A stretch of 64,000 nucleotides of DNA from Bispira polyomma. Its lineage: Eukaryota. The first letter of the stretch is position 1; each line of letters opens with the position of its first letter. Shown here one piece after another: positions 31,500 through 59,753 of the stretch. The position numbers and the translations under genes are program-made. The notes under the pieces are model-generated. The model did not search any database. It had not been told where the DNA came from and saw nothing but the letters and a program-made list of their open reading frames with translations. The stretch spans positions 30,504,001 to 30,568,000 of the forward strand of contig OZ287757.1 of assembly GCA_965649765.1 (NCBI GenBank), read 5' to 3'.

Positions 31500-33258
31500 A
31501 CTTAATCTTCAGGACATGCTTTTTGTATTTCTCAAATAATCTGTATGGAACTAAATAGGTTAGCAGGTACATAATGCATTGCCAATGAGTACTTGTGTCT
31601 GTGCTGATACGTCTCTGTGTACTAGCGTGTACCCTACGAGTGTTAGATTTGATGTTCTGCACGAACCGCAAGGTCATAATAAACAGCATGTTGCTCTAAG
31701 AAATACTTTATTTAACAGTGTGCCAAGACCAACACATGGTGTCAGATGTAAAACTCATATTCAATCACGCAGTAAATTTATGTTTATATGTACTAATATT
31801 GAAACACTGTCCAGTACTACAGCCACACCATATCAGTCAGTGTGAGCGATAATAGATACCTGTAAGTGACTAGAGCTATATAACAAGTACAGGAGGTTCA
31901 GTAATGACATCTGAATTAAAAAATCAATTGAGACTAGCAACACTGGATAGTAGGACCAGAGACAATATTTCAGTGAAGTGGAAAAACTTTAAACAGGCAT
32001 TTCAGTTATACATGACGGCAATCGATTACGATTCTAAACCTGATGTACAAAGAGTAGCAATCCTGCTTGCATGCATTGGCAAAAATGCAAGGGAGGACTT
32101 TTCCACATTTGACTTTGGCACCACTACGGTACATGGGCATGAAGTTGCAGACTCCAAAATTCTAGAGAAGGTACTAGCCAAATTTGAGGCATTTTACGTT
32201 CCAAAATCCAACAGAACTTTGAAACGCTCAAGGTTTATCGGATGTCAGCAAGGACCGGATGAGAATATTGATGCCTTTCTCACAAGACTTAAAGTTAGGG
32301 CTGAGACTTGTGAATTTGGCGCAATAAGGGAATCCATGGCGTGCGATAAATTAGTCTGTGGTGTCAAAGACCTGCAGTTAAGAGAGAAACTGTATTCCAA
32401 GGCAGATTTATCACTTTCAGATGCAGTGAGTTACGCTAAGGCAGCTGAATACGTGGAAGAACACAAATCGGCTATAACAGGCGAACCATCCATAAACCTT
32501 GTGAAAAAAGACAATACGGCACAGAAACCTATGAGCAAATGCAGGTACTGCTGTGACCGCCACATATTCGTCAAAGAAAAGTGCCCTGCTTTCGGTAAGC
32601 AATGCTGTAAATGTGGACAGACAAATCACTTTGCATCTGTATGTAAATCCAAGACACGGCCTCAAAAAGGTAGAAAACACATAAAAATGGTCGAGGTGGA
32701 CAATGAATCTGATTACTCCAGTGATGATAGTAAGTTTCACGGAAGTTTGACTGTAGAGTCGATCGCGAGAACTCAAAGGATTGGGTAGTCTCACTAATTG
32801 TGCACAATACAATATTACCTATGAAACTAGATACAGGGGCACCGGCCAATGTCATCAGCAAATCTGACTTCAATAACAATGACAAAAGGCCAAAATTACA
32901 TCATACCATACAGAAATTGAAAGGATATAATGGGAAAGAGATCAAGGTATATGGCAAAACCGTTCTAGAGGTGAAATGTAAAGGTAAACACCACAAGCGA
33001 CTGTTTTATGTAGTAGATGGTACAGACAAGACACTTTTCTCTAAAGACGCATGTGTAAAATTAGACCTGGTTAGATTACTATACCAAGCAGGTGGAAACT
33101 ACCAATGGGTATATCAGGAATGCAAAGACATGTTTGATGGAAAACTAGGTGAATTACAAGGAGAGTTTGATGGAAAACTAGGTGAATTACAAGGAGAGTA
33201 TAAAATAGAGCTACAAGAAGATGCAGAGCCTGTAGTTCACACCATGTTATTCTCATGA
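31500..33258 (+). mobile_element. Truncated Ty3/Gypsy element: LTR 3' end, PBS, gag, aspartic protease; ends before RT
   Basis: AATAAA at 31678, then ...ACA|TGGTGTCAGA PBS-like sequence at 31738. Gag (31904-32788) has two CCHC-type knuckles; protease LDTGA in 32800-33258. The left LTR boundary is not resolved. Confidence 0.9.
31904..32788 (+). CDS. Gypsy gag
   Basis: WKNFKQAFQLY, QGPDENIDAFLTRLK..AETCEFG, DKLVCGVKD..LREKL, CCKCGQTNHFASVC. Confidence 0.88.
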   Translation: MTSELKNQLRLATLDSRTRDNISVKWKNFKQAFQLYMTAIDYDSKPDVQRVAILLACIGKNAREDFSTFDFGTTTVHGHEVADSKILEKVLAKFEAFYVPKSNRTLKRSRFIGCQQGPDENIDAFLTRLKVRAETCEFGAIRESMACDKLVCGVKDLQLREKLYSKADLSLSDAVSYAKAAEYVEEHKSAITGEPSINLVKKDNTAQKPMSKCRYCCDRHIFVKEKCPAFGKQCCKCGQTNHFASVCKSKTRPQKGRKHIKMVEVDNESDYSSDDSKFHGSLTVESIARTQRIG

Positions 33259-36555: not shown

Positions 36556-37620
36556 TTAGATTGCTTGTGCTTCATCACAGCAGCAATGCCCAACTCTGAT
36601 GTCTCTGTGACAGCCCCAACGATCTGGTTTGTCAATTCTTATATCACCATAGAGTTGAAGGTCAACATTAAAATGTTTTTTTAAAGATTTAAGACAAGGT
36701 TTAATATACACACCAATGAAACTTGGTCCTTCTCCCAACTTATATGGGGTTTTAGGTGATTTTGCTGACAAAATACCAAGGGCAACCAACTTATCATCTT
36801 TTCCTTTGTAGAAGATTAAGGCACCACTGTCTCCTTGCTTTGCAAATGGTATGTCAGGATCAATACTTTGCACTAAAAATGCATTACCAAATTGACCTTT
36901 CCAGTTCAGCCCAAATGGACGCTTCACTATCCATCCTTCTGTTTGACCCGTCTCGGCACCTATCTTGTATACATTTCGCCCATGTGTAACATTTTCTGCA
37001 ATTAGCTCTGTTTTACAATATTCATGGATTTTGTGCTCATTCTTAAGATTAGGCGCAATCTTCATCATTGCTACATCCAAAAATATGGGCTTCTCCCTAA
37101 TTTTTTCACATAATGTTAAACCTGAACTGCTGGTGGCTAGAAGAATGGTATCTCTGGAAACAGGAGTACCCTCTGTGTGTGTTTGGCATGCCTCTGATGA
37201 AATATATCTTCTTTCCTTAGTCTCCTTTTGTCTATTAGAGTTTAATACATGCTGTGCTGTAATTCCAAAAATTCCTCTTTTTTTACATTTAGCAAAACAT
37301 GCAAGACTTCCGTCAAATGTTTCTGTAAAATTATTTTCAAGAGTATCGCTGTTTTCTTTGAAAACTTTGCATGCTTTATTATGCTGAATAGTTTTAACTT
37401 TAGAACCCCTCTTAATGTCACACTTCTTTTTGTTTAAAAATTCAACAGAGAAATTGTCTTCTTCAATGTCAAAGTATGACTCTTCATCTTTAAAGTGTTC
37501 TTGGATATATTTTTTGGCTTTTTCTGTAAATCCTGATCCAGTTTCGATGCCTATTTGTATCCGCCCTTCATGTTTATAAATGTAGTTAAAACATTTAGGC
37601 CTATCGCTGAAAGTAAACAT
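36556..37620 (-). CDS. Trypsin-fold (clan PA) serine protease domain without the disulfide pattern of secreted trypsins; likely the terminal exon of a larger host gene
   Basis: Intact triad: GITAQHV (His), LDVAMM (Asp), QGDSGAL (Ser). VYKIGAETGQTEG motif resembles alpha-lytic/NAL1/Ssy5-type proteases. Confidence 0.85.
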   Translation of the reverse strand: MFTFSDRPKCFNYIYKHEGRIQIGIETGSGFTEKAKKYIQEHFKDEESYFDIEEDNFSVEFLNKKKCDIKRGSKVKTIQHNKACKVFKENSDTLENNFTETFDGSLACFAKCKKRGIFGITAQHVLNSNRQKETKERRYISSEACQTHTEGTPVSRDTILLATSSSGLTLCEKIREKPIFLDVAMMKIAPNLKNEHKIHEYCKTELIAENVTHGRNVYKIGAETGQTEGWIVKRPFGLNWKGQFGNAFLVQSIDPDIPFAKQGDSGALIFYKGKDDKLVALGILSAKSPKTPYKLGEGPSFIGVYIKPCLKSLKKHFNVDLQLYGDIRIDKPDRWGCHRDIRVGHCCCDEAQAI

Positions 37621-38642
37621 ATATTCATAAACATAACTATCAGAGCAAAATTTGCACGAGAAGCATGAACCTGGATTACAACTTGATTTCTTTTAATCAA
37701 TACTTCTTTAACTTAAACCTCTGATCTATGAAAGGATAAAACAGTGGTGTGTATCCAGCAGGCGAGTATTTTTATAAAATACCTTTTCTTGAGATATTTT
37801 AATAGATTGTTTTTACTGTAAGTAATTATTTTGCTTCTCTTGCCTAATTTTGGCTTGTCAGAATCACTTTTTAAACTGTTTTAATTTTTCTATAATACAC
37901 TATTGCATCTTCTTCTCAGAATCATGGATGGACTGAAACTTTTCTCAATGGACCACTCACAGAAATCCACACTTGTACTTTAAAATAAAATAAATAAACG
38001 TGATGTGTTTTCAGGGAAATTTTAATACATGTATCTGTACCACTGCTCTTCTGGAGTTATTTAGTAAAAGTTACAATGCAAATATCAACTGTTGTTTTAC
38101 TTCAATCTCAAGCTTGACTCTGCAAGATAGTAAGATGAAAATTCAACCAAAACAGTATATTTTCCGATAAAGTGATGCAAAATGCAAGTGGAAATATTTT
38201 ATGTTTATTATGTTTTATATTCCTATTGATTTGTACAAATAAAACAAGCTTGGTTTAACTTATAGTAGGTCATGTATGCTTATGCTGTAGAGATAAAGTT
38301 TTACCAATTATGGTTGGCACCTCTGGTAAAAGGTGCTTGTCTATTGTTCCATCAGGCCTTATATTATTTGCCACAATAAAGTACAAGCCTAATGACTTTA
38401 TTTTAACAATTGCGAAATGTTTAAAGAAAACAATAAACAAGAACGTGGTTTAAACATATCTTCTGTAAAAATGGTATGATCTTGAGATAGTCACAGATCA
38501 AATTAGGTCAATTAAAAATGTTTCTAATGGTATGTTATTGCAACGTCCACTGTGACAGCATTATAATTATAACGAGGGGTAAGCTTATATATATTTTGTG
38601 AAAGGGTTAAATAATGTGTTTGCTTTACAAAAAAGAATTTAC

Positions 38643-41600
38643 CTCTGAGTCATCATCTTCGTCACAATGTCATCTATGTTATTATCTTCTAAATCTAAAA
38701 ATGAGTATTTGTCTAAGTGTACATTATCTATTTGGTGTAGCAACAATTGCCCAGAACAGGTAAGCTGCATTTAGTTACTTAATACCTAGCTCTTATTTAA
38801 AAGAATGGGTGCAATAAATCTATCACCGATTCATCCATGATGGTTAGCCCCACTACTAGGCGCTCAGTTTCATAACATTTCAGAAAAGTGAGGATTAGTA
38901 GCTCTGTCACAAACGTTTCAAACTGTCCATAAATAGCATCACAGACTTGCAATCTGTGGCGGCTTAGGGGGGAATTCTGACTTTATAGGAATAGTAGTTA
39001 CTTCTCTGATACCCATCCTTTCCAGTAACATGAATTTGAACCCTGGTCCAAATAATGGAACTATTGGTCCTCCTTGATGCTAGATGAATTTCAACTGCAC
39101 CAATGGTAGATCGATCTAGAACAAGGGTCCATCCTTCATCGACCTGACAGACACTCCCTTTTTTCATTACAAAAATTAACTTTTCATTACAAAAATTAAC
39201 TTGCAAAAAACCTGTCAACCTATAAGTTACCCCAAAGAAGAAGAAATGTCTATCTGGATGTCTACCTAAAAGTTAAATAAAAAAATATCGTCTGTCAATT
39301 AACCTATAAGTTACCAAAATATTTATCTTGCTCTTTGTCGACCTGCCTACCTATAACTTGCAAAAGAAATTATTGGTCAACCTAAAAGTAAAATAAAAAA
39401 ATATTACTTGTCGACCTGTACCTGGGGGGGGGAGGGGGGGTGTTCCCTTGTTGTCGGCTGTATGTAGTCGATAATAATTTTGAAATATCTCGCAGCAGGT
39501 AAGGGCAAGAGTATGGGGACCACAGCAGACTTCCGGATACGAGCTAAAATTTCCGTTTTTGGCCGTTTTTAATTAATTTTGTAATTGTGGTTTCTGGAAC
39601 TTTATTGTTTCGCAGAACTCACTTTTATTATCCTTATATGGAAGTTTGTATTTTTGGGTATTCTCCACAATCAGTTGATTGTTCAATTGGTGACTGTGTA
39701 CTTGCGGTTTCGATAGAATTCTTATTATATGCTGTAAAAAAAGCAAAAATTTATCAATTGGTTCTATGTGAGGTTATTAATAACTCCAGAATTGATAAAG
39801 TTAAAAATATGATAAAAATTTGTCGAAAAAGATTATTATTTTATTGTGATTGCTATGGTTTTTGTTTCATCAGAATCTGTTGAGAAACGGAGATATTTAA
39901 GTTTAAAAACGGGTACCCATATTCACTTTCTGGTTTGATGACGTATATTGTGATGTTGCTGCAAAACTGACGTCATTATGATGTTGCTGTAGTAAAAGAA
40001 GGGTAAAAGGAAATGGCGGTACCACAGTATATATTTTACATGGCATCGAGTGACTGGGAAAATATTACCGGAATTAGACATAAATACAACACAATTTGAT
40101 ATATTTCCAATCATACCGCAGGTATGACCTACATTTTAAAGATAGAATTTAATAAATAACAGATTGTAGAATAATGGTTGTTCAGTATAAAATTCACAGA
40201 AGTGAAGTGAGATTTGAACTTAAGAAATGGTCAAAATGAATTAATACTAAGCTTAAGGTGGGGAAATAACAGAATATTCGTTTCTAGACCCATATCTGTC
40301 CATTCATACCAAAAACAGCCGCCTAGGACGCCGGCAACTCCTTAAACGCTCTTGCATATTAATAGTGTGAATATTAAAAATAACAAGCAGCAAACATACA
40401 TCAGTCTGCCTACGGAAAACCTCATTCAACTGAAAAGGCACACTTGTACATATGTAATGACATTGAACTGGCTCTTGATGAAAGGTGCAGTTAGGGCTTT
40501 GACACTTCTGGACCTGTCAGCAGCTTTTGATACCATTTACCACACCTTCTTAAAATACATTTGGTTTGGCATTGCAGACCTCCTCTTGGAATGGATTGCA
40601 CCATACCTTGCCAATACAAACCAAATAATAAAAATTGATACACATCTATCTATTCCTTTTAATGTACCTTTTGGAGTTCCCAGGGATCCATTTTGTTAGC
40701 CCTCCTATTTATTCTTTACACCTCTCCTTTTTAACAAACTCAATATGAAAAATCACATTTATACCGATGACACCCAAATTTACATATCATTAATGGCAAA
40801 CACTGAAAAAGATCAGCTCAGCATTGTTGCCAGATATCTCAACTCTATCCAAGATTGGATGAATTTTGCCAAACTCAAACTCAATCCTAACAACTGACTT
40901 TATACTAATTGACATGAACGTGAATCACTGTTTCCTATTAACCAACAAGGCAATGAAGTACTCCCAGTTGATCAAGTAAAGTATTTGGGTGTCACTTTTG
41001 GATAACTTGTTTCCTTCAACGATCATCAATCTGATGTACTTCGGTCTTGCTATCTCTATATTCGCAATCTCAAGAGAAAGAGAAAACATCTATCCCACCA
41101 ACCGCTATAGTAATAGAAAATGCACTTGTAGTCAGTCGATTTGACAATTCTGTGATTTTTTGACTAAAGAAGAAATTGAATTTAAAATGTTCAATTCTAC
41201 CTATATATTTTCAGTTACAACTATGTTTACACCAGTTCAAGCATATTTCACTACTCTGACTAATTTTTAAAATAAGTGTAAACAGCATGAATTTAACCGT
41301 TTTATTTGGTCTAAATTACCTGAATTAATTCTGTCAATAAGAAATGGTTGTGAAGCAAGCTAATGTGGTTCCAGTCGAATGCCATGATTTACTCGTTGGA
41401 TAAAACTTTTTATCACTGCCTAAAATTCAACTCTTCAATGAATAACTCTATGGTCATTGATCCTTGCAATTGACTGGTAGCACCAGATGAGGTTTTCTAA
41501 CTGTATAATGAGTCATTGTGAACTAATGCCTAATCACAGAACAATCCAAGTTTTCACTGTGTCTGTCATTTTCATCTTTGTGTTTATGAAAGTTTGAAGA

Positions 41601-44600
41601 GGTAATATTTTCTTAATTCAAAGAATATTGACTTAAAATTAAGTTGCTTGTGGTACCAAGGAAAGGAAACTATGGTAGCTTTTTACAATGCATTTTACCC
41701 TGATATTTATTCATTAAAAATATTACCTGAAGCCGTGCTTGAGGTATCACTTTCTACACCCAGTTCTGTGGTGTTATCATCTGTTTACAAACAAATAATT
41801 GATGTACCAAGTAATATGAAATGCAACTAGGACAGTAACTGTGTATAAATAAGACAATTCATTCGTTAACCATTAAATACCTAGGTTACTGGCAACATTT
41901 GATATCCTTATAGAAATTTAAATATGTCAATGAAACCATAGTAAAATTGTTAAATAAAATGTTGCAGTAGCAGTACAGCCGTATCCTAATTGCAATATTG
42001 GTGCAAGACCAGAGTGCAACACAGGAAGCAGGATACAATGCATAGCTGAGATGAGAAGAGTGGAATAAAATCTTCTATTCCAGATGTTTTGAAGGAACTT
42101 GTCACAAAATTCAGAGTCCACTTTCAGGTTTCAATGGATGCCATAAATCACTTTGATAAATACTTTTACCAATATGTTACAAATTACACAGTGATTACTT
42201 GTTGACTTACATATATAATATAACCTTGATATTTTCTTGATGGTATTATTAGAAGCAGAACAGTTCTGTCTCCAAAAATATTCTCTAATTATTACATGGT
42301 TGTCTGTGTTCACTACAATGTGCAATATCATAGGAAGTAAAACAACTATACATATAAGTAGAATGGTTTCATGTTACTTCAGAAGTTGCATAGGATAATG
42401 TTTGTCAGTAGCTGTGTATGTCTATATATAGGATGTTTGAAATAGAATTCTTTTGTGCGATTGCATGTGAACTAATGTCTACTCACGCAACAATACGGGG
42501 TCACTGCATCTATCATTTGCACCTTAGTGTTTATGAAATTTTGAAGAGGTAATATTTTCTAATTAAGAGAATATTGCCTTAAAATTAAGTTGCTTGTGGT
42601 AACAAGGAAAGGAAACTAGCTTTTTACAATGCATTTTGCCCTGATATTTATTCATTAAAAATATTACCTGAAGCTGTGCTTGAGGTATCACTTTCTACAC
42701 CCAGATCTGTAGTTTTATTATCTGTTTACAAACAAATAATTGATGTAGTAAATAATATGAGATTTAACAAAAACTGCAACTGTGTATAAATAGGACAATT
42801 CATTCATAAACTATCAAATACCTAGGTTACTGGCAACATTTGAAATCTTTATGCATAATTGCAATATTGGTGCAAGCCCAAAGTGCAACACAGGAAGCAG
42901 GATACAATGCATAGCCGAGGTGAGAAGAGGGGAATAAAATCTAGCATTCCAGACGTTTTGAAGAAACTTGTCTCATAATTCAGAGTCCACTGTCACGTGT
43001 CAATGGATGCCATGAATCACTTTAATACATGTTTTCACCAATATGTCACAAATTACACAATGATTGTGCATTGCCTTACATATATAATATAACCTTGATA
43101 TTTTCTTGTTGGTATTATTAAAAGCAGAACAGTTCTGTCTCCAAAAATATTCCTTGATTGTAACATGGTTGACTGTGTTCACTACAATTTGAAGAATATC
43201 ATAGGAAGTGCAAACAACTATACATATACTTAGAATGGTTTTATGTTAGTTAAGAAGTTGCAGAGGACAATGTTTGTCAGTAGCTGTGTATGTGTATATA
43301 TAGGATGTTTGAATTAAAAAAAATGTGTGCGATTGAATACTTTTGTCAGGGTATACAGAGACTGATACAGCCAGGCTTCAATGTGTTGCTCTAATATAGA
43401 ATAAATTAACAATTTGAAGTACCTGTGACCGGATCTGACTGATCAAAACCTCCATCCTTTTTTATTGGTGTCACTGGAAGAAAAACATCACCTGTTACCA
43501 ATATAATCTTAGTCAGTGTAATGGACTGTAAAATATTATCACTGGAGTTATTAACTGTTAACATATTATTAAACTGGTTTAAAGTGACTTCAGAATACAA
43601 GCAATACATGACATTTAAATCCTTAAATATCTTTGATTGTCGATACTTAAAAATAATCCAGTGCCTAGATATAGGGATAAAATTGGTAATTTAGTTAAGT
43701 TCAATTTTAAAGAATTGAATTTAATTGAATTTAAAATGTTCAATTACACCTATATATTTTCAATTACAACTAAAAGTACATCAGTTCAAAAATATTTAAG
43801 TACGCTCCAATTACAAGTAAATACTCAATTAAAACTTTAATTGAACACAACCCTAGTATGGAAAATAGTGTGTCCGGTGCTGGGCTCAAATTCTTTGCAT
43901 ATTTCACATTCTTTTTTGTTATGAATGACTGTTTATCATTATTCTATTTTCCCTTTCAGGAATCTTGGTGCATATTTTGATGAAAACATGAACATAAATG
44001 ATGTTGTAAAGAGAAAAGCTGCTTCTGTTCAAGGATAATTGAGAAAGTTGTATAGAATCAGAAAGTTTCTTATATTTGATGCATGTAAATCACTAGTTCA
44101 AACTCTTGTAATATCGTGCTTAGTCTCTTGCTTGGTAGTCTACTGCTTGGTAGAAAAAGGCAAATATTCAACATTTAAAAATACTCCAGAATACCTCAGC
44201 ACGACTAATATATCAAGCTAGTTCAAGAACAATGCTCAAAAGTATCTAATCAAGCTACATTGGCTACCTGTAAATGAATGTGTTCTATTTTGTAATTTGA
44301 CATATGTTAAAAATGTTTGAAAAATGATGCTCCATCTTACTTATCAGAACTGTTGCACCTCTATTAACCAAATCAGACTTTAAGATCAAAAACCGATAAC
44401 AACCTACAGAAACATCTATTACGATCAAACACATCTACACAATCATTAAAATTAGCCATACCAAGAGAGTGGAACAAATTACCTGCACATAATGCTAACT
44501 GATCAAAACCTCCATCCTCTTTTATCGGTGCCTCTGAAAGAGAAACATCACATGTTACCAATATAATCTTAGTCAATATATTGGACTGCAAAATGCTAGC

Positions 44601-47600
44601 ACTGGAGTTAATAACCGTGGATATTTTATTACACTGGGGTAAAGTGACTACAGAATGCAAGCAAACTTAACATCCAACTCCTTAAATATATGTGATTGTC
44701 GATCTACTTCACAAATTATCCAGTATCCAGATATAGGGATAAAATTGGTAACTTGCTTAAATTCAATTATAAATAGTTGAGTTCAATTGAATTAAAAATG
44801 TTTAATTACACCTATATATTTCAAGTTACAACTATAGCTACACCAGTTCAAAAATATTTAGGTACGCTCTAATTATAAGTAAATACTCAATTAAAACTGT
44901 AATTGAACACAACCCTGGTATGGAAAATAGTTTGTCCTTATATAATTAGAATTGTTTTGGGTTTGTTCAGAGGACAATGTTTGTCAGTAGCAGTGTATGT
45001 ATATATATAGGATGTTTGAAGAAAAAATGTGTGTGATTGCTAGGCTTCAGTCTGGTGGTCTAATATAGAATAAATTAACAATTTGAAGTACCTGTGACCG
45101 GAAGTGACTGATCAAAACTTCCATCCTTTTTTATTGGTGTCTCTGGAAGAAAAACATCACCTGTTACCAATATAATCTTTGTCAATGTAATGGACTGTGA
45201 AATATTATCACTGGAGTTATTAACTGTAGATATCATTAAAATGGGGTAAAGTGACTACAGAATACAAGCAATACATAACATCCAACTTCTTAACTATCTG
45301 TGATTGTCGATCAACCCGACAAATTATCCAGTGCCTAGATATAGGGATAAAATTGGTAATTTGGTTAAGTTCAAATAATAAATAGTTGAGTTTAATTTAA
45401 TTTAAAATGTTCAATTATACTTATATCTTTTCCGTTACAACTATAATTACACCAGTTCAAGAATATGTAAATACGCTGTAATTACGAATAATTACTCAAT
45501 TAGAACTGTAATTGAACACAACCCTGGCATGGAAAATAGCGTGTCCTGTGCTTGGCTTAAATTCTTTGCATGTTTTATATTCTTGTTTTCTGTGAATGAC
45601 TGTTCATCAATATGTCACATGTAAATACAATTTTCACTTTTGTTAGTTTTATTAAATTAATCTTTTGGTTTTCATGAAACAATCATTACACAAAAGTTAT
45701 TACCACAGAAAGATAGAAGTTGTTGTGTATATTAACAAATGAAAAATTTATATAGCCCTGGCCAATATTTAACACTGTGGCATACTGCATTTTTTATTAG
45801 GCTGTTTGAGTTTATTTAGTTAATTACAGAAACAGAGTACCTAATCTCGATTAGGCTGTATGAAAAGCATGTTGCATTAAACTGGGTCAAATATCTCAGA
45901 TATATACACTCAAAGAAAAGCTAATTATTCGACAAAAAAGTGCCCTTTTCAAGGGACGCTAAATTAAAAATACAGTTTGACTTTGAGAAATTTTTAAAAC
46001 ATGTTGTATTGTTGCATATTTCTATATTGTTTGTGCATAAATAGCTGGCTGCAAACGAAAAACCCCAATTTAGATGATGTTGATTATGGAGTGTTGTTTC
46101 GTCTTTCATGCAAATTTAGATAATTTTATTGTATTTTGGACATAATTGACTTCACCAGGAGTCTGGTCTGTTGCAACGAAAAATCATAACACTACCTAAG
46201 TCAACCCCTTAGTATCCACCATCTAACTAAGTAACCACTCCAAACAATAGGCGGAAGTCCATTTTCTTCATTACAAAATTGTAGTCTCTATCCCCAAGAA
46301 GATGTTGCAAACCGAGGGTCAGGTCATAACCATGTTAGGAATTCATAGGAATTTTACTTACAAAACTTCCAATTACAATGTTCCTACTAATTCCTAACAT
46401 TTGCTGAATACAGCCTTGATAGACTCTGGGGGAATCCTCTTCTCCATCCAACAGATCTATATTTGTACCTGTAGCTTAGAACTTAGGTAGTGTCCCAAGC
46501 TACAGATATCTAACACCATAATTCCTCAAAATATATGTAATGATATTTTAGAAAAGCAGTGTCGTACCATTAAGGGTAATAGAAAGTAATGGTCTTTGGT
46601 TTAAAATCTGCACTGTACAAATATAGAACCATCTGCAAACTTGTAGCAATATGTAGGTGAGACCTATTGCACTTCTAAGGAATCTTGGTGCATATTTGGA
46701 TGAAAACATGAACATAAATTATGTTGTAAAGAGAAAAGCTGTTTCTGTCAAACGATAATTGAGAAATTTGTATAGAATCAGAAAGTTTCTTATATTTGAT
46801 GCCTGTAAATCACTAGTCCAATATTTTGTAATATCGCGCTTAGACTATTGCAGTAGTCTACTGCTTGGTGCAAAAAGGTGAATATTCAACATTTAAAAAG
46901 ACTCAAGAATACCACAGCACGATTAACATATCAAGCTAGTTCAAGGGACAATGCCCAAGAGTATTTAATCAAGCTACACTGGCTACCTGTAAATAAACGT
47001 GTTCTATTTCGTAATTTGACATATGTTAAAAATGTTTCAACAACGAATCTCCATCTTACTTATCAGAACTGTTGCGCCTCTACAACCAAATCAGACTCTA
47101 AGATCAAGAACAGATAACAAGCTTCGGGAACATCTATTTGGATCCAACACATCTACACAATCATTTAAATTAGCCATACCAAGAGAGTAGAACAAATTAC
47201 CTGCACATAATGCTAACTGATCAAAACCTCCATCCCCTTTTATCGGTGCCCCTAGAAGAAAAACATCACATGTTACCAATATAATCTTAGTCAATGTAAT
47301 GGACTGCAAAATATTATCAGGGGAGTTATTAACTGTGGGTATTTTATTACACTGGGGTAAAGTGACTACAGAATGCAAGCAAACATAAAATCCAACTCCT
47401 TAAATATATGTGATTGTTGATCTACTTCACAAATTATCCAGTACCCAGATATAGGGATAAAATTGGTAACTTGCTTAAATTCAATTATAAATAGTTGAGT
47501 TTAATTGAATTAAAAATGTTCTATTACACCGATATATTTTAATTACAACTAAAAGTACACCAGTTCAAAAATATTTAGGTACGCTTTAAGTATAAGTAAA

Positions 47601-50600
47601 TACTCAATTAAAACTTTGATTGAACACAACCCTGGTATGGAAAATAGCGTGTCTGGTGCTGGGCTCAAATTCTTTGCATATTTCACATTCTTTTTTGTTA
47701 TGAATGACTGTTTATCATTATTCTATTCTGCTTCTCAGGAATCTTGGTGCATATTTTGATGAAAACATGAACATAAATGATGTTGTAAAGAGAAAAGCTG
47801 CTTCTGTTCAAGGATAATTGAGAAAGTTGTATAGAATCAGAAAGTTTCTTATATTTGATGCATGTAAATCACTAGTTCAAACTCTTGTAATATCGTGCTT
47901 AGTCTCTTGCTTGGTAGTCTACTGCTTGGTAGAAAAAGGCAAATATTCAACATTTAAAAATACTCCAGAATACCTCAGCACGACTAATATATCAAGCTAG
48001 TTCAAGAACAATGCTCAAAAGTATCTAATCAAGCTACATTGGCTACCTGTAAATGAATGTGTTCTATTTTGTAATTTGACATATGTTAAAAATGTTTGAA
48101 AAATGATGCTCCATCTTACTTATCAGAACTGTTGCACCTCTATTAACCAAATCAGACTTTAAGATCAAAAACCGATAACAACCTACAGAAACATCTATTA
48201 CGATCAAACACATCTACACAATCATTAAAATTAGCCATACCAAGAGAGTGGAACAAATTACCTGCACATAATGCTAACTGATCAAAACCTCCATCCTCTT
48301 TTATCGGTGCCTCTGAAAGAGAAACATCACATGTTACCAATATAATCTTAGTCAATATATTGGACTGCAAAATGCTAGCACTGGAGTTAATAACCGTGGA
48401 TATTTTATTACACTGGGGTAAAGTGACTACAGAATGCAAGCAAACTTAACATCCAACTCCTTAAATATATGTGATTGTCGATCTACTTCACAAATTATCC
48501 AGTATCCAGATATAGGGATAAAATTGGTAACTTGCTTAAATTCAATTATAAATAGTTGAGTTCAATTGAATTAAAAATGTTTAATTACACCTATATATTT
48601 CAAGTTACAACTATAGCTACACCAGTTCAAAAATATTTAGGTACGCTCTAATTATAAGTAAATACTCAATTAAAACTGTAATTGAACACAACCCTGGTAT
48701 GGAAAATAGTTTGTCCTTATATAATTAGAATTGTTTTGGGTTTGTTCAGAGGACAATGTTTGTCAGTAGCAGTGTATGTATATATATAGGATGTTTGAAG
48801 AAAAAATGTGTGGGATTGCTAGGCTTCAGTCTGGTGGTCTAATATAGAATAAATTAACAATTTGAAGTACCTGTGACCGGAAGTGACTGATCAAAACTTC
48901 CATCCTTTTTTATTGGTGTCTCTGGAAGAAAAACATCACCTGTTACCAATATAATCTTTGTCAATGTAATGGACTGTGAAATATTATCACTGGAGTTATT
49001 AACTGTAGATATCATTAAAATGGGGTAAAGTGACTACAAGCAATACATAACATCCAACTTCTTAACTATCTGTGATTGTCGATCAACCCGACAAATTATC
49101 CAGTGCCTAGATATAGGGATAAAATTGGTAATTTGGTTAAGTTCAAATAATAAATAGTTGAGTTTAATTTAATTTAAAATGTTCAATTATACTTATATCT
49201 TTTCCATTACAACTATAATTACACCAGTTCAAGAATATGTAAATACGCTGTAATTACGAATAATTACTCAATTAGAACTGTAATTGAACACAACCCTGGC
49301 ATGGAAAATAGCGTGTCCTGTGCTTGGCTTAAATTCTTTGCATGTTTTATATTCTTGTTTTCTGTGAATGACTGTTCATCAATATGTCACATGTAAATAC
49401 AATTTTCACTTTTGTTAGTTTTATTAAATTAATCTTTTGGTTTTCATGAAACACTCATTACACAAAAGTTATTACCACAGAAAGATAGAAGTTGTTGTGT
49501 ATATTAACAAATGAAAAATTTATATAGCCCTGGCCAATATTTAACACTGTGGCATACTGCATTTTTTATTAGGCTGTTTGAGTTTATTTAGTTAATTACA
49601 GAAACAGAGTACCTAATCTCGATTAGGCTGTATGAAAAGCATGTTGCATTAAACTGGGTCAAATATCTCAGATATATACACTCAAAGAAAAGCTAATTAT
49701 TCGACAAAAAAGTGCCCTTTTCAAGGGACGCTAAATTAAAAATACAGTTTGACTTTGAGAAATTTTTAAAACATGTTGTATTGTTGCATATTTCTATATT
49801 GTTTGTGCATAAATAGCTGGCTGCAAACGAAAAACCCCAATTTAGATGATGTTGATTATGGAGTGTTGTTTCGTCTTTCATGCAAATTTAGATAATTTTA
49901 TTGTATTTTGGACATAATTGACTTCACCAGGAGTCTGGTCTGTTGCAACGAAAAATCATAACACTACCTAAGTCAACCCCTTAGTATCCACCATCTAACT
50001 AAGTAACCACTCCAAACAATAGGCGGAAGTCCATTTTCTTCATTACAAAATTGTAGTCTCTATCCCCAAGAAGATGTTGCAAACCGAGGGTCAGGTCATA
50101 ACCATGTTAGGAATTCATAGGAATTTTACTTACAAAACTTCCAATTACAATGTTCCTACTAATTCCTAACATTTGCTGAATACAGCCTTGATAGACTCTG
50201 GGGGAATCCTCTTCTCCATCCAACAGATCTATATTTGTACCTGTAGCTTAGAACTTAGGTAGTGTCCCAAGCTACAGATATCTAACACCATAATTCCTCA
50301 AAATATATGTAATGATATTTTAGAAAAGCAGTGTCGTACTATTAAGGGTAATAGAAAGTAATGGTCTTTGGTTTAAAATCTGCACTGTACAAATATAGAA
50401 CCATCTGCAAACTTGTAGCAATATGTAGGTGAGACCTATTGCACTTCTAAGGAATCTTGGTGCATATTTGGATGAAAACATGAACATAAATTATGTTGTA
50501 AAGAGAAAAGCTGTTTCTGTCAAACGATAATTGAGAAATTTGTATAGAATCAGAAAGTTTCTTATATTTGATGCCTGTAAATCACTAGTCCAATATTTTG

Positions 50601-53600
50601 TAATATCGCGCTTAGACTATTGCAGTAGTCTACTGCTTGGTGCAAAAAGGGGAATATTCAACATTTAAAAAGACTCAAGAATACCACAGCACGATTAACA
50701 TATCAAGCTAGTTCAAGGGACAATGCCCAAGAGTATTTAATCAAGCTACACTGGCTACCTGTAAATAAACGTGTTCTATTTCGTAATTTGACATATGTTA
50801 AAAATGTTTCAACAACGAATCTCCATCTTACTTATCAGAACTGTTGCGCCTCTACAACCAAATCAGACTCTAAGATCAAGAACAGATAACAAGCTTCGGG
50901 AACATCTATTTGGATCCAACACATCTACACAATCATTTAAATTAGCCATACCAAGAGAGTAGAACAAATTACCTGCACATAATGCTAACTGATCAAAACC
51001 TCCATCCCCTTTTATCGGTGCCCCTAGAAGAAAAACATCACATGTTACCAATATAATCTTAGTCAATGTAATGGACTGCAAAATATTATCAGGGGAGTTA
51101 TTAACTGTGGGTATTTTATTACACTGGGGTAAAGTGACTACAGAATGCAAGCAAACATAAAATCCAACTCCTTAAATATATGTGATTGTTGATCTACTTC
51201 ACAAATTATCCAGTACCCAGATATAGGGATAAAATTGGTAACTTGCTTAAATTCAATTATAAATAGTTGAGTTTAATTGAATTAAAAATGTTCTATTACA
51301 CCGATATATTTTAATTACAACTAAAAGTACACCAGTTCAAAAATATTTAGGTACGCTTTAAGTATAAGTAAATACTCAATTAAAACTTTGATTGAACACA
51401 ACCCTGGTATGGAAAATAGCGTGTCTGGTGCTGGGCTCAAATTCTTTGCATATTTCACATTCTTTTTTGTTATGAATGACTGTTTATCATTATTCTATTC
51501 TGCTTCTCAGGAATCTTGGTGCATATTTTGATGAAAACATGAACATAAATGATGTTGTAAAGAGAAAAGCTGCTTCTGTTCAAGGATAATTGAGAAAGTT
51601 GTATAGAATCAGAAAGTTTCTTATATTTGATGCATGTAAATCACTAGTTCAAACTCTTGTAATATCGTGCTTAGTCTCTTGCTTGGTAGTCTACTGCTTG
51701 GTAGAAAAAGGCAAATATTCAACATTTAAAAATACTCCAGAATACCTCAGCACGACTAATATATCAAGCTAGTTCAAGAACAATGCTCAAAAGTATCTAA
51801 TCAAGCTACATTGGCTACCTGTAAATGAATGTGTTCTATTTTGTAATTTGACATATGTTAAAAATGTTTGAAAAATGATGCTCCATCTTACTTATCAGAA
51901 CTGTTGCACCTCTATTAACCAAATCAGACTTTAAGATCAAAAACCGATAACAACCTACAGAAACATCTATTACGATCAAACACATCTACACAATCATTAA
52001 AATTAGCCATACCAAGAGAGTGGAACAAATTACCTGCACATAATGCTAACTGATCAAAACCTCCATCCTCTTTTATCGGTGCCTCTGAAAGAGAAACATC
52101 ACATGTTACCAATATAATCTTAGTCAATATATTGGACTGCAAAATGCTAGCACTGGAGTTAATAACCGTGGATATTTTATTACACTGGGGTAAAGTGACT
52201 ACAGAATGCAAGCAAACTTAACATCCAACTCCTTAAATATATGTGATTGTCGATCTACTTCACAAATTATCCAGTATCCAGATATAGGGATAAAATTGGT
52301 AACTTGCTTAAATTCAATTATAAATAGTTGAGTTCAATTGAATTAAAAATGTTTAATTACACCTATATATTTCAAGTTACAACTATAGCTACACCAGTTC
52401 AAAAATATTTAGGTACGCTCTAATTATAAGTAAATACTCAATTAAAACTGTAATTGAACACAACCCTGGTATGGAAAATAGTTTGTCCTTATATAATTAG
52501 AATTGTTTTGGGTTTGTTCAGAGGACAATGTTTGTCAGTAGCAGTGTATGTATATATATAGGATGTTTGAAGAAAAAATGTGTGTGATTGCTAGGCTTCA
52601 GTCTGGTGGTCTAATATAGAATAAATTAACAATTTGAAGTACCTGTGACCGGAAGTGACTGATCAAAACTTCCATCCTTTTTTATTGGTGTCTCTGGAAG
52701 AAAAACATCACCTGTTACCAATATAATCTTTGTCAATGTAATGGACTGTGAAATATTATCACTGGAGTTATTAACTGTAGATATCATTAAAATGGGGTAA
52801 AGTGACTACAGAATACAAGCAATACATAACATCCAACTTCTTAACTATCTGTGATTGTCGATCAACCCGACAAATTATCCAGTGCCTAGATATAGGGATA
52901 AAATTGGTAATTTGGTTAAGTTCAAATAATAAATAGTTGAGTTTAATTTAATTTAAAATGTTCAATTATACTTATATCTTTTCCGTTACAACTATAATTA
53001 CACCAGTTCAAGAATATGTAAATACGCTGTAATTACGAATAATTACTCAATTAGAACTGTAATTGAACACAACCCTGGCATGGAAAATAGCGTGTCCTGT
53101 GCTTGGCTTAAATTCTTTGCATGTTTTATATTCTTGTTTTCTGTGAATGACTGTTCATCAATATGTCACATGTAAATACAATTTTCACTTTTGTTAGTTT
53201 TATTAAATTAATCTTTTGGTTTTCATGAAACACTCATTACACAAAAGTTATTACCACAGAAAGATAGAAGTTGTTGTGTATATTAACAAATGAAAAATTT
53301 ATATAGCCCTGGCCAATATTTAACACTGTGGCATACTGCATTTTTTATTAGGCTGTTTGAGTTTATTTAGTTAATTACAGAAACAGAGTACCTAATCTCG
53401 ATTAGGCTGTATGAAAAGCATGTTGTATTAAACTGGGTCAAATATCTCAGATATATACACTCAAAGAAAAGCTAATTATTCGACAAAAAAGTGCCCTTTT
53501 CAAGGGACGCTAAATTAAAAATACAGTTTGACTTTGAGAAATTTTTAAAACATGTTGTATTGTTGCATATTTCTATATTGTTTGTGCATAAATAGCTGGC

Positions 53601-56490
53601 TGCAAACGAAAAACCCCAATTTAGATGATGTTGATTATGGAGTGTTGTTTCGTCTTTCATGCAAATTTAGATAATTTTATTGTATTTTGGACATAATTGA
53701 CTTCACCAGGAGTCTGGTCTGTTGCAACGAAAAATCATAACACTACCTAAGTCAACCCCTTAGTATCCACCATCTAACTAAGTAACCACTCCAAACAATA
53801 GGCGGAAGTCCATTTTCTTCATTACAAAATTGTAGTCTCTATCCCCAAGAAGATGTTGCAAACCGAGGGTCAGGTCATAACCATGTTAGGAATTCATAGG
53901 AATTTTACTTACAAAACTTCCAATTACAATGTTCCTACTAATTCCTAACATTTGCTGAATACAGCCTTGATAGACTCTGGGGGAATCCTCTTCTCCATCC
54001 AACAGATCTATATTTGTACCTGTAGCTTAGAACTTAGGTAGTGTCCCAAGCTACAGATATCTAACACCATAATTCCTCAAAATATATGTAATGATATTTT
54101 AGAAAAGCAGTGTCGTACTATTAAGGGTAATAGAAAGTAATGGTCTTTGGTTTAAAATCTGCACTGTACAAATATAGAACCATCTGCAAACTTGTAGCAA
54201 TATGTAGGTGAGACCTATTGCACTTCTAAGGAATCTTGGTGCATATTTGGATGAAAACATGAACATAAATTATGTTGTAAAGAGAAAAGCTGTTTCTGTC
54301 AAACGATAATTGAGAAATTTGTATAGAATCAGAAAGTTTCTTATATTTGATGCCTGTAAATCACTAGTCCAATATTTTGTAATATCGCGCTTAGACTATT
54401 GCAGTAGTCTACTGCTTGGTGCAAAAAGGGGAATATTCAACATTTAAAAAGACTCAAGAATACCACAGCACGATTAACATATCAAGCTAGTTCAAGGGAC
54501 AATGCCCAAGAGTATTTAATCAAGCTACACTGGCTACCTGTAAATAAACGTGTTCTATTTCGTAATTTGACATATGTTAAAAATGTTTCAACAACGAATC
54601 TCCATCTTACTTATCAGAACTGTTGCGCCTCTACAACCAAATCAGACTCTAAGATCAAGAACAGATAACAAGCTTCGGGAACATCTATTTGGATCCAACA
54701 CATCTACACAATCATTTAAATTAGCCATACCAAGAGAGTAGAACAAATTACCTGCACATAATGCTAACTGATCAAAACCTCCATCCCCTTTTATCGGTGC
54801 CCCTAGAAGAAAAACATCACATGTTACCAATATAATCTTAGTCAATGTAATGGACTGCAAAATATTATCAGGGGAGTTATTAACTGTGGGTATTTTATTA
54901 CACTGGGGTAAAGTGACTACAGAATGCAAGCAAACATAAAATCCAACTCCTTAAATATATGTGATTGTTGATCTACTTCACAAATTATCCAGTACCCAGA
55001 TATAGGGATAAAATTGGTAACTTGCTTAAATTCAATTATAAATAGTTGAGTTTAATTGAATTAAAAATGTTCTATTACACCGATATATTTTAATTACAAC
55101 TAAAAGTACACCAGTTCAAAAATATTTAGGTACGCTTTAAGTATAAGTAAATACTCAATTAAAACTTTGATTGAACACAACCCTGGTATGGAAAATAGCG
55201 TGTCTGGTGCTGGGCTCAAATTCTTTGCATATTTCACATTCTTTTTTGTTATGAATGACTGTTTATCATTATTCTATTCTGCTTCTCAGGAATCTTGGTG
55301 CATATTTTGATGAAAACATGAACATAAATGATGTTGTAAAGAGAAAAGCTGCTTCTGTTCAAGGATAATTGAGAAAGTTGTATAGAATCAGAAAGTTTCT
55401 TATATTTGATGCATGTAAATCACTAGTTCAAACTCTTGTAATATCGTGCTTAGTCTCTTGCTTGGTAGTCTACTGCTTGGTAGAAAAAGGCAAATATTCA
55501 ACATTTAAAAATACTCCAGAATACCTCAGCACGACTAATATATCAAGCTAGTTCAAGAACAATGCTCAAAAGTATCTAATCAAGCTACATTGGCTACCTG
55601 TAAATGAATGTGTTCTATTTTGTAATTTGACATATGTTAAAAATGTTTGAAAAATGATGCTCCATCTTACTTATCAGAACTGTTGCACCTCTATTAACCA
55701 AATCAGACTTTAAGATCAAAAACCGATAACAACCTACAGAAACATCTATTACGATCAAACACATCTACACAATCATTAAAATTAGCCATACCAAGAGAGT
55801 GGAACAAATTACCTGCACATAATGCTAACTGATCAAAACCTCCATCCTCTTTTATCGGTGCCTCTGAAAGAGAAACATCACATGTTACCAATATAATCTT
55901 AGTCAATATATTGGACTGCAAAATGTTAGCATTGGAGTTAATAACCGTGGATATTTTATTACACTGGGGTAAAGTGACTACAGAATGCAAGCAAACTTAA
56001 CATCCAACTCCTTAAATATATGTGATTGTCGATCTACTTCACAAATTATCCAGTATCCAGATATAGGGATAAAATTGGTAACTTGCTTAAATTCAATTAT
56101 AAATAGTTGAGTTCAGTTGAATTAAAAATGTTTAATTACACCTATATATTTCAAGTTACAACTATAGCTACACCAGTTCAAAAATATTTAGGTACGCTCT
56201 AATTATAAGTAAATACTCAATTAAAACTGTAATTGAACACAACCCTGGTATGGAAAATAGTTTGTCCTTATATAATTAGAATTGTTTTGGGTTGGTTCAG
56301 AGGACAATGTTTGTCAGTAGCAGTGTATGTATATATATAGGATGTTTGAAGAAAAAATGTGTGTGATTGCTAGGCTTCAGTCTGGTGGTCTAATATAGAA
56401 TAAATTAACAATTTGAAGTACCTGTGACCGGAAGTGACTGATCAAAACTTCCATCCTTTTTTATTGGTGTCCCTGGAAGAAAAACATCAC
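38643..56490 (-). CDS. Array of small internal exons of the host gene: five 69-nt exons (56490-56422, 52711-52643, 48939-48871, 45160-45092, 43491-43423), two 54-nt exons (42721-42668, 41780-41727) and a 52-nt exon (38694-38643)
   Basis: Each has an AG acceptor and GT donor. The 69- and 54-nt exons are phase 1/1 and stop-free (GDVFLPETPIKKDGSFDQSLPVT; DNKTTDLGVESDTSSTAS). Confidence 0.6.
40460..41150 (+). mobile_element. Decayed L2/CR1 RT fragment
   Basis: LTLLDLSAAFDTI, FGVP, YTDDTQIY, KLKLNP, YLGVT, SRFD motifs with frameshifts. Confidence 0.88.
41510..43330. repeat. Older diverged tandem duplication (~0.9 kb x2) carrying the 54-nt exon
   Basis: 41510-42460 aligns with 42465-43330; paralogous ORFs 42131-42331 and 43000-43182. 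Confidence 0.85.
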
Positions 56491-57513
56491 CTGTTACCAA
56501 TATAATCTTTGTCAATGTAATGGACTGTGAAATATTATCACTGGAGTTATTAACTGTAGATATCATTAAAATGGGGTAAAGTGACTACAGAATACAAGCA
56601 ATACATAACATCCAACTTCTTAACTATCTGTGATTGTCGATCAACCCGACAAATTATCCAGTGCCTAGATATAGGGATAAAATTGGTAATTTGGTTAAGT
56701 TCAAATAATAAATAGTTGAGTTTAATTTAATTTAAAATGTTCAATTATACTTATATCTTTTCCGTTACAACTATAATTACACCAGTTCAAGAATATGTAA
56801 ATACTCTGTAATTACGAATAATTACTCAATTAGAACTGTAATTGAACACAACCCTGGCATGGAAAATAGCATGTCCTGTGCTTGGCTTAAATTCTTTGCA
56901 TGTTTTATATTCTTGTTTTCTGTGAATGACTGTTCATCAATATGTCACATGTAAATACAATTTTCACTTTTGTTAGTTTTATTAAATTAATCTTTTGGTT
57001 TTCATGAAACACTCATTACACAAAAGTTATTACCACAGAAAGATAGAAGTTGTTGTGTATATTAACAAATGAAAAATTTATATAGCCCTGGCCAATATTT
57101 AACACTGTGGCATACTGCATTTTTTATTAGGCTGTTTGAGTTTATTTAGTTAATTACAGAAACAGAGTACCTAATCTCGATTAGGCTGTATGAAAAGCAT
57201 GTTGCATTAAACTGGGTCAAATATCTCAGATATATACACTCAAAGAAAAGCTAATTATTCGACAAAAAAGTGCCCTTTTCAAGGGACGCTAAATTAAAAA
57301 TACAGTTTGACTTTGAGAAATTTTTAAAACATGTTGTATTGTTGCATATTTCTATATTGTTTGTGCATAAATAGCTGGCTGCAAACGAAAAACCCCAATT
57401 TAGATGATGTTGATTATGGAGTGTTGTTTCATCTTTCATGCAAATTTAGATAATTTTATTGTATTTTGGACATAATTGACTTCACCAGGAGTCTGGTCTG
57501 TTGCAACGAAAAA
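43760..57513. repeat. Near-identical tandem repeat, unit ~3,779 bp, ~3.6 copies; each unit contains exon copies and two L2/CR1 3' fragments
   Basis: Identical ORFs recur at 44039, 47818, 51590 and 55369 (spacing 3779, 3772, 3779); a 7-bp deletion near 49038 explains the short unit. The array ends abruptly at ~57513. Confidence 0.97.
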
Positions 57514-58469
57514 CCAATATAATCTTAGTCAATATAATGGACTGCAAAATATTAGCACTAGAGTAAATAACTGTGGATATTGTATTACACATATGTATGC
57601 GTGTTGGGGATCCTGGTGTAACTAGAGATGAATGACTCTCTGTTTAATCAATTCGAGAGTTCCAAACTAACAATATTGTGACATAAACTTAAAATGTAAA
57701 AAAATACCAAAATATTTCAACAAGTACAATGGTATTATCAGTACTATTGCTTTAAATATGACCAACTAGAAAATCAAAAATATACCTTAATTACACAAGG
57801 TCACAGGTAAAAATCTGTTCAGTGCATAATATTGTCTGACCTTGGATTCCTACACAGTCATAATACATTCGGATGCTGTAAAATCAATGATGAATGATAG
57901 AGAAACCAAAAACAGAAAAATGTATCATTTTCAGTTCAGGAGAGCGACCTTGAAATAGATATGTAGAGTTCTGAACCTTGTGGTTATGTGGAGTCCTACA
58001 GAAATGTCCTAGCAACTTAATTGGCATTCATAGTTTGAGATACTGTACAAAATACTGGAAATTGACCTTTGAGACCACAGTTTGACCTTGAACCCAAGGT
58101 CATAGATCAAATTTGACCAGTGCCTCAGATTACCAGATTCTAGTTTCCTGTATGCTCATAATATATTCCGATTTTCTAAACCCAATAGTTAAGGCGATAG
58201 TTGGCATTTCATGAATCCTCCAAAATTTTCAAAAATTAAAAACATTTGTCACTCAAAAACAAAATACCTGACCAGAAAAAAAAACAGAAAGTTTGTATCA
58301 CATGTAAATTTGGAGAAAATATTAAAGTGTATGCAAACTCAGTGCCACGGGAATAAGTCAGCGACCTCGTCAGCTGACTCCAAATATAGAGAAATGTATA
58401 TCACTATTTTCTTACATATTGAATCTACTCTCCTCCTACTATTTTCCGAGCTATGAATTGCTACTATAC

Positions 58470-59753
58470 CTGGTTTTTCATGTGCCCATAAAGATTCATA
58501 TTGTGTTTTCAATTCATTTACTAATAACGTCTGATTAGTATCATTTAAAACAGCAATAAAAATTTTAAAGCTTTCTTCAGCAGGGTTTTTTATCAGCACC
58601 TGTCAGAATATAAAATAATAATAGAAATCACCTGCTATATCTGTGCAATGAGTTTGGCATTTGGTGTCATTTATTTTTATATGATAAAGTTCCATACTGC
58701 AAACAGTGAGCAATGATACATTATTGTAACACTGGGGGGTAATGTTTTAAAACCGTTAAACAGATACATCTATTGCTAATTGGACAGACATCGAGAACAT
58801 GATATTTAAGTATCACACCAAATTTTTAAAACTTATTGTGAACCTGTAAAGTAGTATAGGCTTTTTGTAAAAATTAGTTTATTAAATATTTTTGTGCAAT
58901 ATTGAGTCTTACTTGGGGTCCACAGTGTCCAATATCCGAACAGTGTCTTGCAACACTTAAATATGAATTAAAACATCATGTTGAATTTTAAAAACCCAAC
59001 ATATCCATACTGTTTTAGTGTTTCCAGAGACACAAATACTATTCCATTCATTTTCATATTACTGATTAGATTGAACAAAAGGATACACTCAAAAATACAA
59101 CATTACAGAAAATTTATTCTACCTGATTAGTTGTTTTTTAACTTAAAATTGTTTTCATTACTGCATATAACACACATTATATAATGAAGCAATGCGGACA
59201 CTACAATATGCTTATATGTCTTATATTGAGTGACCAAATGGTACATATAATATTTTATGAAGTTTATTAGACTATTAGGTTTATTTCGTAGGACATACAA
59301 ACTGAGGTCAAGAAAAGGCTTTAACATCTGAAAATGAAAAACTTAGACTTGATATGGAGGTATTTGGTTAATATGCCGTTGAGGCTTGGGCTGTCTGTTG
59401 CAGGTGCTATATTGGAGCACTGCAGGCTTTGTACTTCTGGGAAGGCCATTGACTCATAAAATTTAGATGACTTTGTCAGCTAATTTACATATGATTGATC
59501 ATAAGAAAAAAAATATACCTCTGCAATGAGTTTTGCACTGGCTTCACTAGGCGATTCGGGACTTCTATCGTTGATTTCTTGAAAGAGCCTCAACCCTGCA
59601 GGATTAGGCCCGTAGAAACCACAATTAAATAGCCTTGAGTTGACCTCATCTATGTGTTTCAGTAATTCAGAGACAAGCTTAAAGATCCTTTCAAAGATGA
59701 TGTAGTGTTTTTTTTTTATGTGGTGTTTTCTCAGTTTCCACACAGTCAGCCAT
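58470..59753 (-). CDS. Two exons (59753-59519, 58599-58470) encoding a CARD-like death-fold domain at the N-terminus of the host gene
   Basis: Phase-0 donor GAG|gtatat matches acceptor ctgacag|GTG. The joined sequence ...EASAKLIAEVLIKNPAEESFKIFIAVLNDTNQTLLVNELK fits CARD helices 4-6. The ATG at 59753 is in frame only if the 10-nt homopolymer at 59708-59717 is 9 nt. Confidence 0.6.

What the first reader, a model, noticed from the sequence alone, without database searches (positions are those of the whole stretch)
36556..59753. Host gene with CARD-like domain, repeat linker and trypsin-like serine protease: a caspase-like layout with a different catalytic fold
Seen: co-oriented minus-strand exons with compatible phases run from a CARD-like N-terminus (59753-58470) through phase-1 micro-exons to 38643, followed by a protease ORF with an intact His/Asp/Ser triad; no signal peptide is evident. 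Known: death-fold prodomains drive proximity activation of caspases, and CARD-like domains fused to trypsin-like proteases activate bacterial gasdermins. Inference: an intracellular animal immune or cell-death protease with this architecture. Caveats: the join across 37980-37620 has stops or frameshifts in my reading and the start needs a 1-nt homopolymer correction, so this copy may be a pseudogene or misassembled.
Basis: partly seen in the sequence, partly recalled or inferred. Interest (0 to 1): 0.8.

Follow-up and report, generated by a model that had tools for sequence, protein, structure and literature searches.

The report
CARD-headed NAL1-like worm serine protease
This animal gene joins an immune docking domain (CARD) to a cytoplasmic serine protease most like the plant enzyme NAL1, a caspase-like layout with a different blade; this copy has a real frameshift near its start, and no transcript has been seen.

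Summary
Eighteen minus-strand exons run: two-exon CARD, 14 frame-neutral linker microexons, a 52-nt exon, then a 349-codon protease exon with an intact His/Asp/Ser triad. The 'broken' stretch 37980-37620 is intron; the phase-2 acceptor at 37606 recurs in 11 of 12 loci. The other caveat is worse than stated: the frameshift after the ATG stands unchanged in contigs of three DNA runs, so it is not an assembly slip (an intact second allele is not excluded). The N-terminus is a CARD by indirect evidence: 10 of 14 other genome matches to its second exon lie in or just behind Pfam CARD matches. The protease is NAL1/Ssy5-like, not a secreted trypsin. It belongs to a fast-evolving family (57 profile matches here) that carries RING, LRR or HEPN heads in other animals. 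No other CARD-headed member was found, nor any paper describing one. Best reading: an exon-shuffled, clustering-activated immune protease, with this allele recently knocked out. One mRNA is inferred, not shown; no RNA run exists. The scan noted a similar protease gene before (s1-621305), without a CARD.

The parts
59519..59769 (-). Exon 1: acceptor at 59770, ATG at 59753, N-terminal two thirds of the CARD; ends in phase 0
   Evidence: 44% aa identity to an intact paralog exon at G000:C10:21725157; four helices in a low-confidence model of the paralog exon
59708..59750 (-). Region of the net frameshift (includes an A10 run, 59717-59708); the ATG frame stops after 20 codons
   Evidence: unchanged in contigs of three DNA runs
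58470..58599 (-). Exon 2: C-terminal third of the CARD (helices 5-6); phase 0 to phase 1
57647..58284 (.). Dispersed repeat between CARD-derived DNA and linker-module DNA; candidate seam of the fusion
   Evidence: dozens of 70-77% matches genome-wide; CARD-paralog likeness ends at 58399; linker-intron remnant begins near 57580
43423..56472 (-). Twelve 51-nt phase-1/phase-1 microexons (17 aa each), starting at 56472, 55863, 54802, 52693, 52084, 51023, 48921, 48312, 47251, 45142, 44533, 43473
   Evidence: all have AG/GT ends and no stop; one homolog in paralog L002
43900..57516 (.). Tandem array of a 3.78-kb unit (three full copies and a partial fourth, 99.5-99.8% identical) that multiplied the microexons
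42668..42721 (-). 54-nt Ser/Thr/Asp-rich linker exon, phase 1/1
   Evidence: homologs in L002 and L003
41727..41780 (-). Second 54-nt linker exon, duplicate of the former
38643..38694 (-). Penultimate exon, 52 nt, phase 1 to phase 2
   Evidence: kept in L002-L005; similar phase 1-to-2 exon before P0001 in another assembly
37607..38642 (-).
36556..37606 (-). Terminal exon: about 60-aa alpha/beta segment, NAL1/Ssy5-like trypsin-fold serine protease (H119, D177, S260), Cys/His-rich tail, stop

Best explanation
A host gene assembled by exon shuffling. A two-exon CARD ending in phase 1 became joined, across a dispersed repeat, to the phase-1 linker exons of a NAL1-like serine protease gene. Shown: exon layout, triad, fold, family, paralogs, frameshift. 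Inferred: the exons form one mRNA of about 728 codons. Inferred mechanism: the protein is cytosolic; its CARD docks on a CARD-bearing sensor or filament; the long flexible linker (about 240 aa) lets protease domains meet; clustering orders the active site, as oligomerisation does in NAL1 and FAM111A; it then cuts itself in the linker and cuts host or pathogen proteins in an immune or cell-death response. It lacks trypsin's Asp189 (Phe at that place by motif count), so non-basic P1 residues are likely. The allele in this assembly is most likely a recent loss-of-function version of a gene that was working until lately.
For: All 17 joins are phase-compatible and every internal exon has AG/GT ends. 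Linker, penultimate and protease exons recur together in paralogs. The protease exon starts in phase 2 and needs an upstream start; no in-frame ATG lies in the linker exons. Only a repeat and about 200 bp separate CARD-derived from linker-derived DNA. CARD identity: 2 of 14 non-self exon-2 matches lie inside Pfam CARD hits of E 1.6e-12, and 8 lie 1-8 kb behind CARD_2 N-half exons on the same strand (nominal chance 1e-25, overstated because three pairs are recent duplicates). Weak direct hits: CARD_2 E 0.045 and caspase-9 CARD E 1.6. Protease: NAL1 is the best PDB match by profile (E 1e-8) and by Foldseek (E 2e-10); Z 17.5 over 211-215 residues. Long-term selection: five close paralogs keep open frames with net in-frame gaps at 21-33% DNA divergence, while intron gaps break frame; the window's branch is the shortest of the clade. 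dN/dS 0.6-1.1 fits fast immune-type evolution. NAL1 activity needs the hexamer (PMC12012508); FAM111A needs dimerisation (PMC10920703).
Against: No RNA run holds the locus. The frameshift is in the reads' contigs. No CARD was found upstream of the four closest paralogs within the 28-38 kb fetched. None of 20 long homologs scanned has a Pfam death fold, so the fusion is seen once. The only close CARD paralog has no protease within 40 kb. Exon 1 alone matches no CARD profile, structure or Atlas cluster. dN/dS near 1 also fits relaxed selection.
Confidence: 0.55

Rival explanations
1. The gene is alive despite the assembly's frameshift: the other haplotype or other individuals carry an open allele, an upstream ATG exon ending in phase 1 enters the CARD frame, or polymerase slippage on the A10 run yields some in-frame mRNA.
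For: Exon 59769-59519 is open throughout in phase 1. Four ATG-to-phase-1-donor candidates lie at 63119-61473. All other exons and splice sites are intact. Logan contigs drop variants (notes). Slippage on long A runs is known from my own knowledge, not tested here.
Against: The paralog starts at the homologous ATG, in frame. The upstream candidates have no support from homology. Contigs of two samples show only this allele.
Confidence: 0.2
2. Two neighbours: a CARD-only gene whose second exon reads on to a stop, and a separate protease gene with its own, unseen first exon.
For: Exon 2 reads through the donor for about 43 codons to a stop, and AATAAA-like signals follow. The CARD paralog has no recognisable downstream exons in 40 kb. 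No paralog shows the fusion.
Against: No candidate first exon for the protease was found. The first linker-intron remnant begins right behind the repeat. The exon-2 donor is canonical, in phase 1 and kept in the paralog. Most other family members have short open frames around this exon, as internal exons do.
Confidence: 0.13
3. Duplication debris: a CARD copy landed by chance before a protease module and the chimera never worked; the 3.78-kb array and the frameshift are decay.
For: Frameshift; dN/dS 0.94 in CARD exon 1; very recent array growth; repeat at the seam.
Against: At 31% DNA divergence from its paralog the CARD has no stop, both splice pairs are intact and exon 2 has dN/dS 0.52. There is one lesion in about 730 codons and 34 splice sites. 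The protease branch is short.
Confidence: 0.12

Closest known systems
Initiator and inflammatory caspases (CARD prodomain + C14 protease)
   Same: CARD, linker, protease order; no leader; clustering is the likely switch
   Different: Ser-His-Asp trypsin fold instead of the Cys-His caspase fold; no QACRG; Asp specificity not expected; a very long microexon linker
Bacterial CARD-like/bDLD + trypsin-like proteases (PMC10312443; PMC8195603)
   Same: Death-fold head on a trypsin-fold protease, in a defence setting
   Different: Intron-split animal gene built from the animal's own CARD family; no linked gasdermin or NTPase; no homology to those proteins tested or shown, so it is read as convergent
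Rice NAL1 (PF25819) and yeast Ssy5 (PF08192, S64)
   Same: Closest profiles and structures; intracellular; triad; N-terminal alpha/beta segment before the protease
   Different: About 19% identity; S64 matched over 73 of 692 positions only and Nal1_C below cut-off; CARD head; hexamer contacts and autoprocessing untested
FAM111A (PMC10920703, PMC9798293)
   Same: Intracellular animal trypsin-fold protease, dimer-activated, antiviral
   Different: UBL/PIP head, not CARD; not among the top sequence or fold matches here
Uncharacterised lophotrochozoan NAL1-like proteases (Lingula XP_013395621.1, Pinctada KAK3101235.1, Saccostrea XP_061197608.1)
   Same: Same protease family
   Different: Heads are LRR, HEPN_DZIP3 (weak) or unrecognised, and RING in unnamed ENA proteins; none scanned has a CARD

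Membership tests
CARD (death-fold superfamily) | Score over the Pfam CARD or CARD_2 cut-off | tested here: inconclusive
   Single exons do not reach it (best E 0.045); the joined domain was not searched, by the operators' rule
CARD (death-fold superfamily) | Homology to recognised CARDs | tested here: met
   Indirect: 10 of 14 non-self exon-2 matches lie in or behind Pfam CARD/CARD_2 matches
CARD (death-fold superfamily) | Six-helix Greek-key bundle | tested here: inconclusive
   Half-domain model has four helices, pLDDT 61; fold searches give nothing meaningful
CARD (death-fold superfamily) | Homotypic binding or filament formation | not testable with these tools
   needs experiment
Trypsin-fold (clan PA) serine protease | His/Asp/Ser triad in order, GDSG motif, two-barrel fold | tested here: met
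Secreted S1A trypsin | Signal peptide, IVGG start, conserved disulfides, Asp189 | tested here: not met
   None seen in the sequence or alignment; no Pfam Trypsin hit for the window protein
NAL1 / Ssy5 (S64) group | Best profile and structure match | tested here: met
   S64 24.6 bits against cut-off 23.6 on a short stretch; Nal1_C 19.5 against 26.1; NAL1 top, tied with Streptomyces proteases
NAL1 / Ssy5 (S64) group | Oligomer-dependent or prodomain-controlled activity | not testable with these tools
   needs experiment
Caspase | C14 domain with His-Cys dyad | tested here: not met
   No PF00656 match in the window's range
Bacterial CARD-protease-gasdermin system | Linked gasdermin cleaved by the protease | tested here: not met
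   The one gasdermin match is on another chromosome; cleavage itself is untestable here

The most novel reading that the evidence does not exclude
NAL1-like proteases are a swappable effector module of lophotrochozoan immunity, and this CARD-headed version is an expressed serine-protease counterpart of initiator caspases, activated on CARD assemblies and cutting gasdermin or other death effectors; a sister locus may even fuse the same module behind an intact caspase.
Probability: 0.2. Interest if true: 0.85.

Novelty: new variant of a known kind. Interest (0 to 1): 0.56.

Why it matters
Death-fold-recruited proteolysis in animals is credited to caspases and paracaspases; CARD-trypsin fusions are described from bacteria. 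A worm that built the same layout from its own CARD and an overlooked NAL1-like protease would show convergence and give a testable non-caspase route to cell death. The locus also points to a large, fast-evolving, unstudied family of cytosolic animal proteases with interchangeable heads. The weight is limited because the fusion is seen once, the allele is frameshifted and expression is unknown.

Tried and rejected
Coding reading of 37980-37620: rejected, it is intron. Homopolymer assembly error: not supported. RIG-I-like origin of the CARD: RLR C-terminal domains lie on another chromosome, not by the CARD cluster at C10:21.7-22.3 Mb. Direct identification of exon 1 failed in Pfam, PDB sequence, fold search, Atlas and word search. 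The word-based protein search found only two relatives, so the large search was used once. CARD exons upstream of paralogs L002-L005 and of four loci from another assembly: none in the DNA fetched. Only about 9 kb was available above the first linker exon of L002, and 10 kb for the foreign loci. Paper searches found no animal CARD-trypsin protein; the library is incomplete. The tree is the quick method only.

Full report
Setting. The window is G000:C10:30504001-30568000 of a 1.035-Gb animal assembly and has no N. Earlier scan notes call the animal a fan worm; I did not test this. The best structural neighbours of the protease are molluscan proteins.

Gene model. On the minus strand: exon 1 (59769-59519, ATG at 59753, phase 0 end), exon 2 (58599-58470, phase 0 to 1), twelve 51-nt and two 54-nt phase-1/1 microexons, a 52-nt exon (38694-38643, phase 1 to 2), and a terminal exon from 37606 to the stop at 36556. 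All internal exons have AG/GT ends. Most microexons come from a 3.78-kb tandem unit whose copies are 99.5-99.8% identical.

First caveat resolved. The protease exon opens at a pyrimidine-rich acceptor at 37607, in phase 2, matching the phase-2 end at 38643. The same acceptor and phase are seen in 11 of 12 loci and in loci of another assembly. Four paralogs keep the penultimate exon. The DNA between aligns to paralog intron with mostly frame-breaking gaps, whereas gaps in the protease exon are net in frame. So 37980-37620 is intron.

Second caveat stands. The ATG frame ends after 20 codons, and the model is 3n+1 long. The single close paralog of the two head exons (C10:21725157) is open from the homologous ATG, and the window has a 10-nt insertion against it. 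Contigs of three DNA runs cover this place with no difference, so an assembly slip is unlikely. Such contigs drop variants, so an intact second allele is not excluded. No RNA run holds the locus.

Is the head a CARD? Direct tests on single exons are weak: CARD_2 E 0.045 for the paralog's exon 2, caspase-9 CARD E 1.6, nothing for exon 1, and a low-confidence four-helix model with no useful fold match. The indirect test is strong. A profile of exon 2 has 14 non-self matches in the genome. Two lie inside Pfam CARD hits, and eight lie 1-8 kb behind same-strand CARD_2 matches that cover only model positions about 10-61, the same two-exon split as here. Some of these are recent duplicates of each other, but chance is still negligible. 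The joined domain and the joined protein were not searched or folded.

The protease. His119, Asp177 and Ser260 are invariant across 14 relatives. Pfam gives Peptidase_S64 and Nal1_C. NAL1 is the best solved relative by profile and Foldseek, and ties with Streptomyces proteases at Z about 17.5. It has no signal peptide, no IVGG start, no Cys after the catalytic His and no Asp189. A profile finds 57 matches in this genome and 3587 clusters at E up to 0.001 elsewhere. Long homologs carry RING, LRR or, weakly, HEPN heads; named ones come from Lingula, Pinctada, Saccostrea and Pecten. None of the 20 scanned has a death fold. The window's protease forms a clade with four paralogs (support 99, quick tree) and has the shortest branch. 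Pairwise dN/dS is 0.6-1.1 with all frames open.

One gene or two? The protease exon cannot start translation itself, and no first exon for it was found. Likeness to the CARD paralog ends at 58399, a dispersed repeat fills 58284-57647, and a remnant of linker-exon intron starts near 57580. This leaves little room for a separate promoter and looks like a shuffling seam.

Mechanism. Inferred: CARD docking clusters the protein, the long linker lets protease domains meet, and clustering orders the active site. NAL1 is active only as a hexamer (PMC12012508) and FAM111A needs dimerisation (PMC10920703). CARD-like and death-like domains on trypsin-like proteases are known from bacterial defence (PMC10312443, PMC8195603). 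One gasdermin gene exists on another chromosome; nothing links it to this protease. An immune role is inferred from the CARD, the kinds of head in the family, the family's size and its rate of change.

A related lead. In paralog L003 (C14:25.05-25.08 Mb) the same linker-penultimate-protease module lies 0.8 kb behind the last exon of a caspase with intact SHG and QACRG motifs, itself downstream of ankyrin exons. A phase-1 splice would fuse them in frame, but the donor would be an unusual GTT and the caspase exon can also read on to a stop. This is untested.

Verdict. The architecture is real in the DNA and appears undescribed in animals in the papers I could search. It is a new variant of a known kind, seen once, in an allele that is probably knocked out, with no expression data. 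Interest 0.56.

Noticed in passing
L030:4185-5753, L029:1869-9033 and L028 (G000:C14:25.053-25.079 Mb, +): Ankyrin exons, a 305-aa ORF that looks COR-like by eye (no Pfam hit), then a caspase with intact SHG and QACRG exons, 0.8 kb before the linker exon of an intact NAL1-like protease: a possible caspase plus serine protease fusion. A sister caspase copy at C14:27.67 Mb has no protease match nearby.
   Followed up: partly
G000:C10:21.72-22.28 Mb: Cluster of two-exon CARD genes (at least six exon pairs or halves), including the closest paralog of this gene's head; downstream domains unknown.
   Followed up: partly
window 4894-26506: Maverick/Polinton-like element with terminal repeats and PolB-, capsid-, protease-, ATPase-, integrase- and BIR-like ORFs (recognised by eye). 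PolB and integrase are split over several ORFs. Described only.
   Followed up: no
window 57497-57486 and copies near 53718, 49939, 46167 (minus): Possible further 12-nt phase-1/1 microexon at the start of each tandem unit; frame-neutral; coordinates approximate.
   Followed up: no
window 36620-36559 (minus): Cys/His-rich C-terminal tail shared with L002-L004 and P0001/P0002; poorly modelled; possible metal-binding motif.
   Followed up: no
P0021, P0028, P0047 (ENA contigs of 1.8-2.4 kb): RING finger, acidic linker and NAL1-like protease in one ORF; a starred clade in the quick tree; source organisms unknown.
   Followed up: partly
G000:C14:9745685-9746065: Single gasdermin match in the genome.
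   Followed up: no
window 31904-33258 (+): Broken gag/protease remnant of an LTR retrotransposon downstream of the gene (by eye).
   Followed up: no
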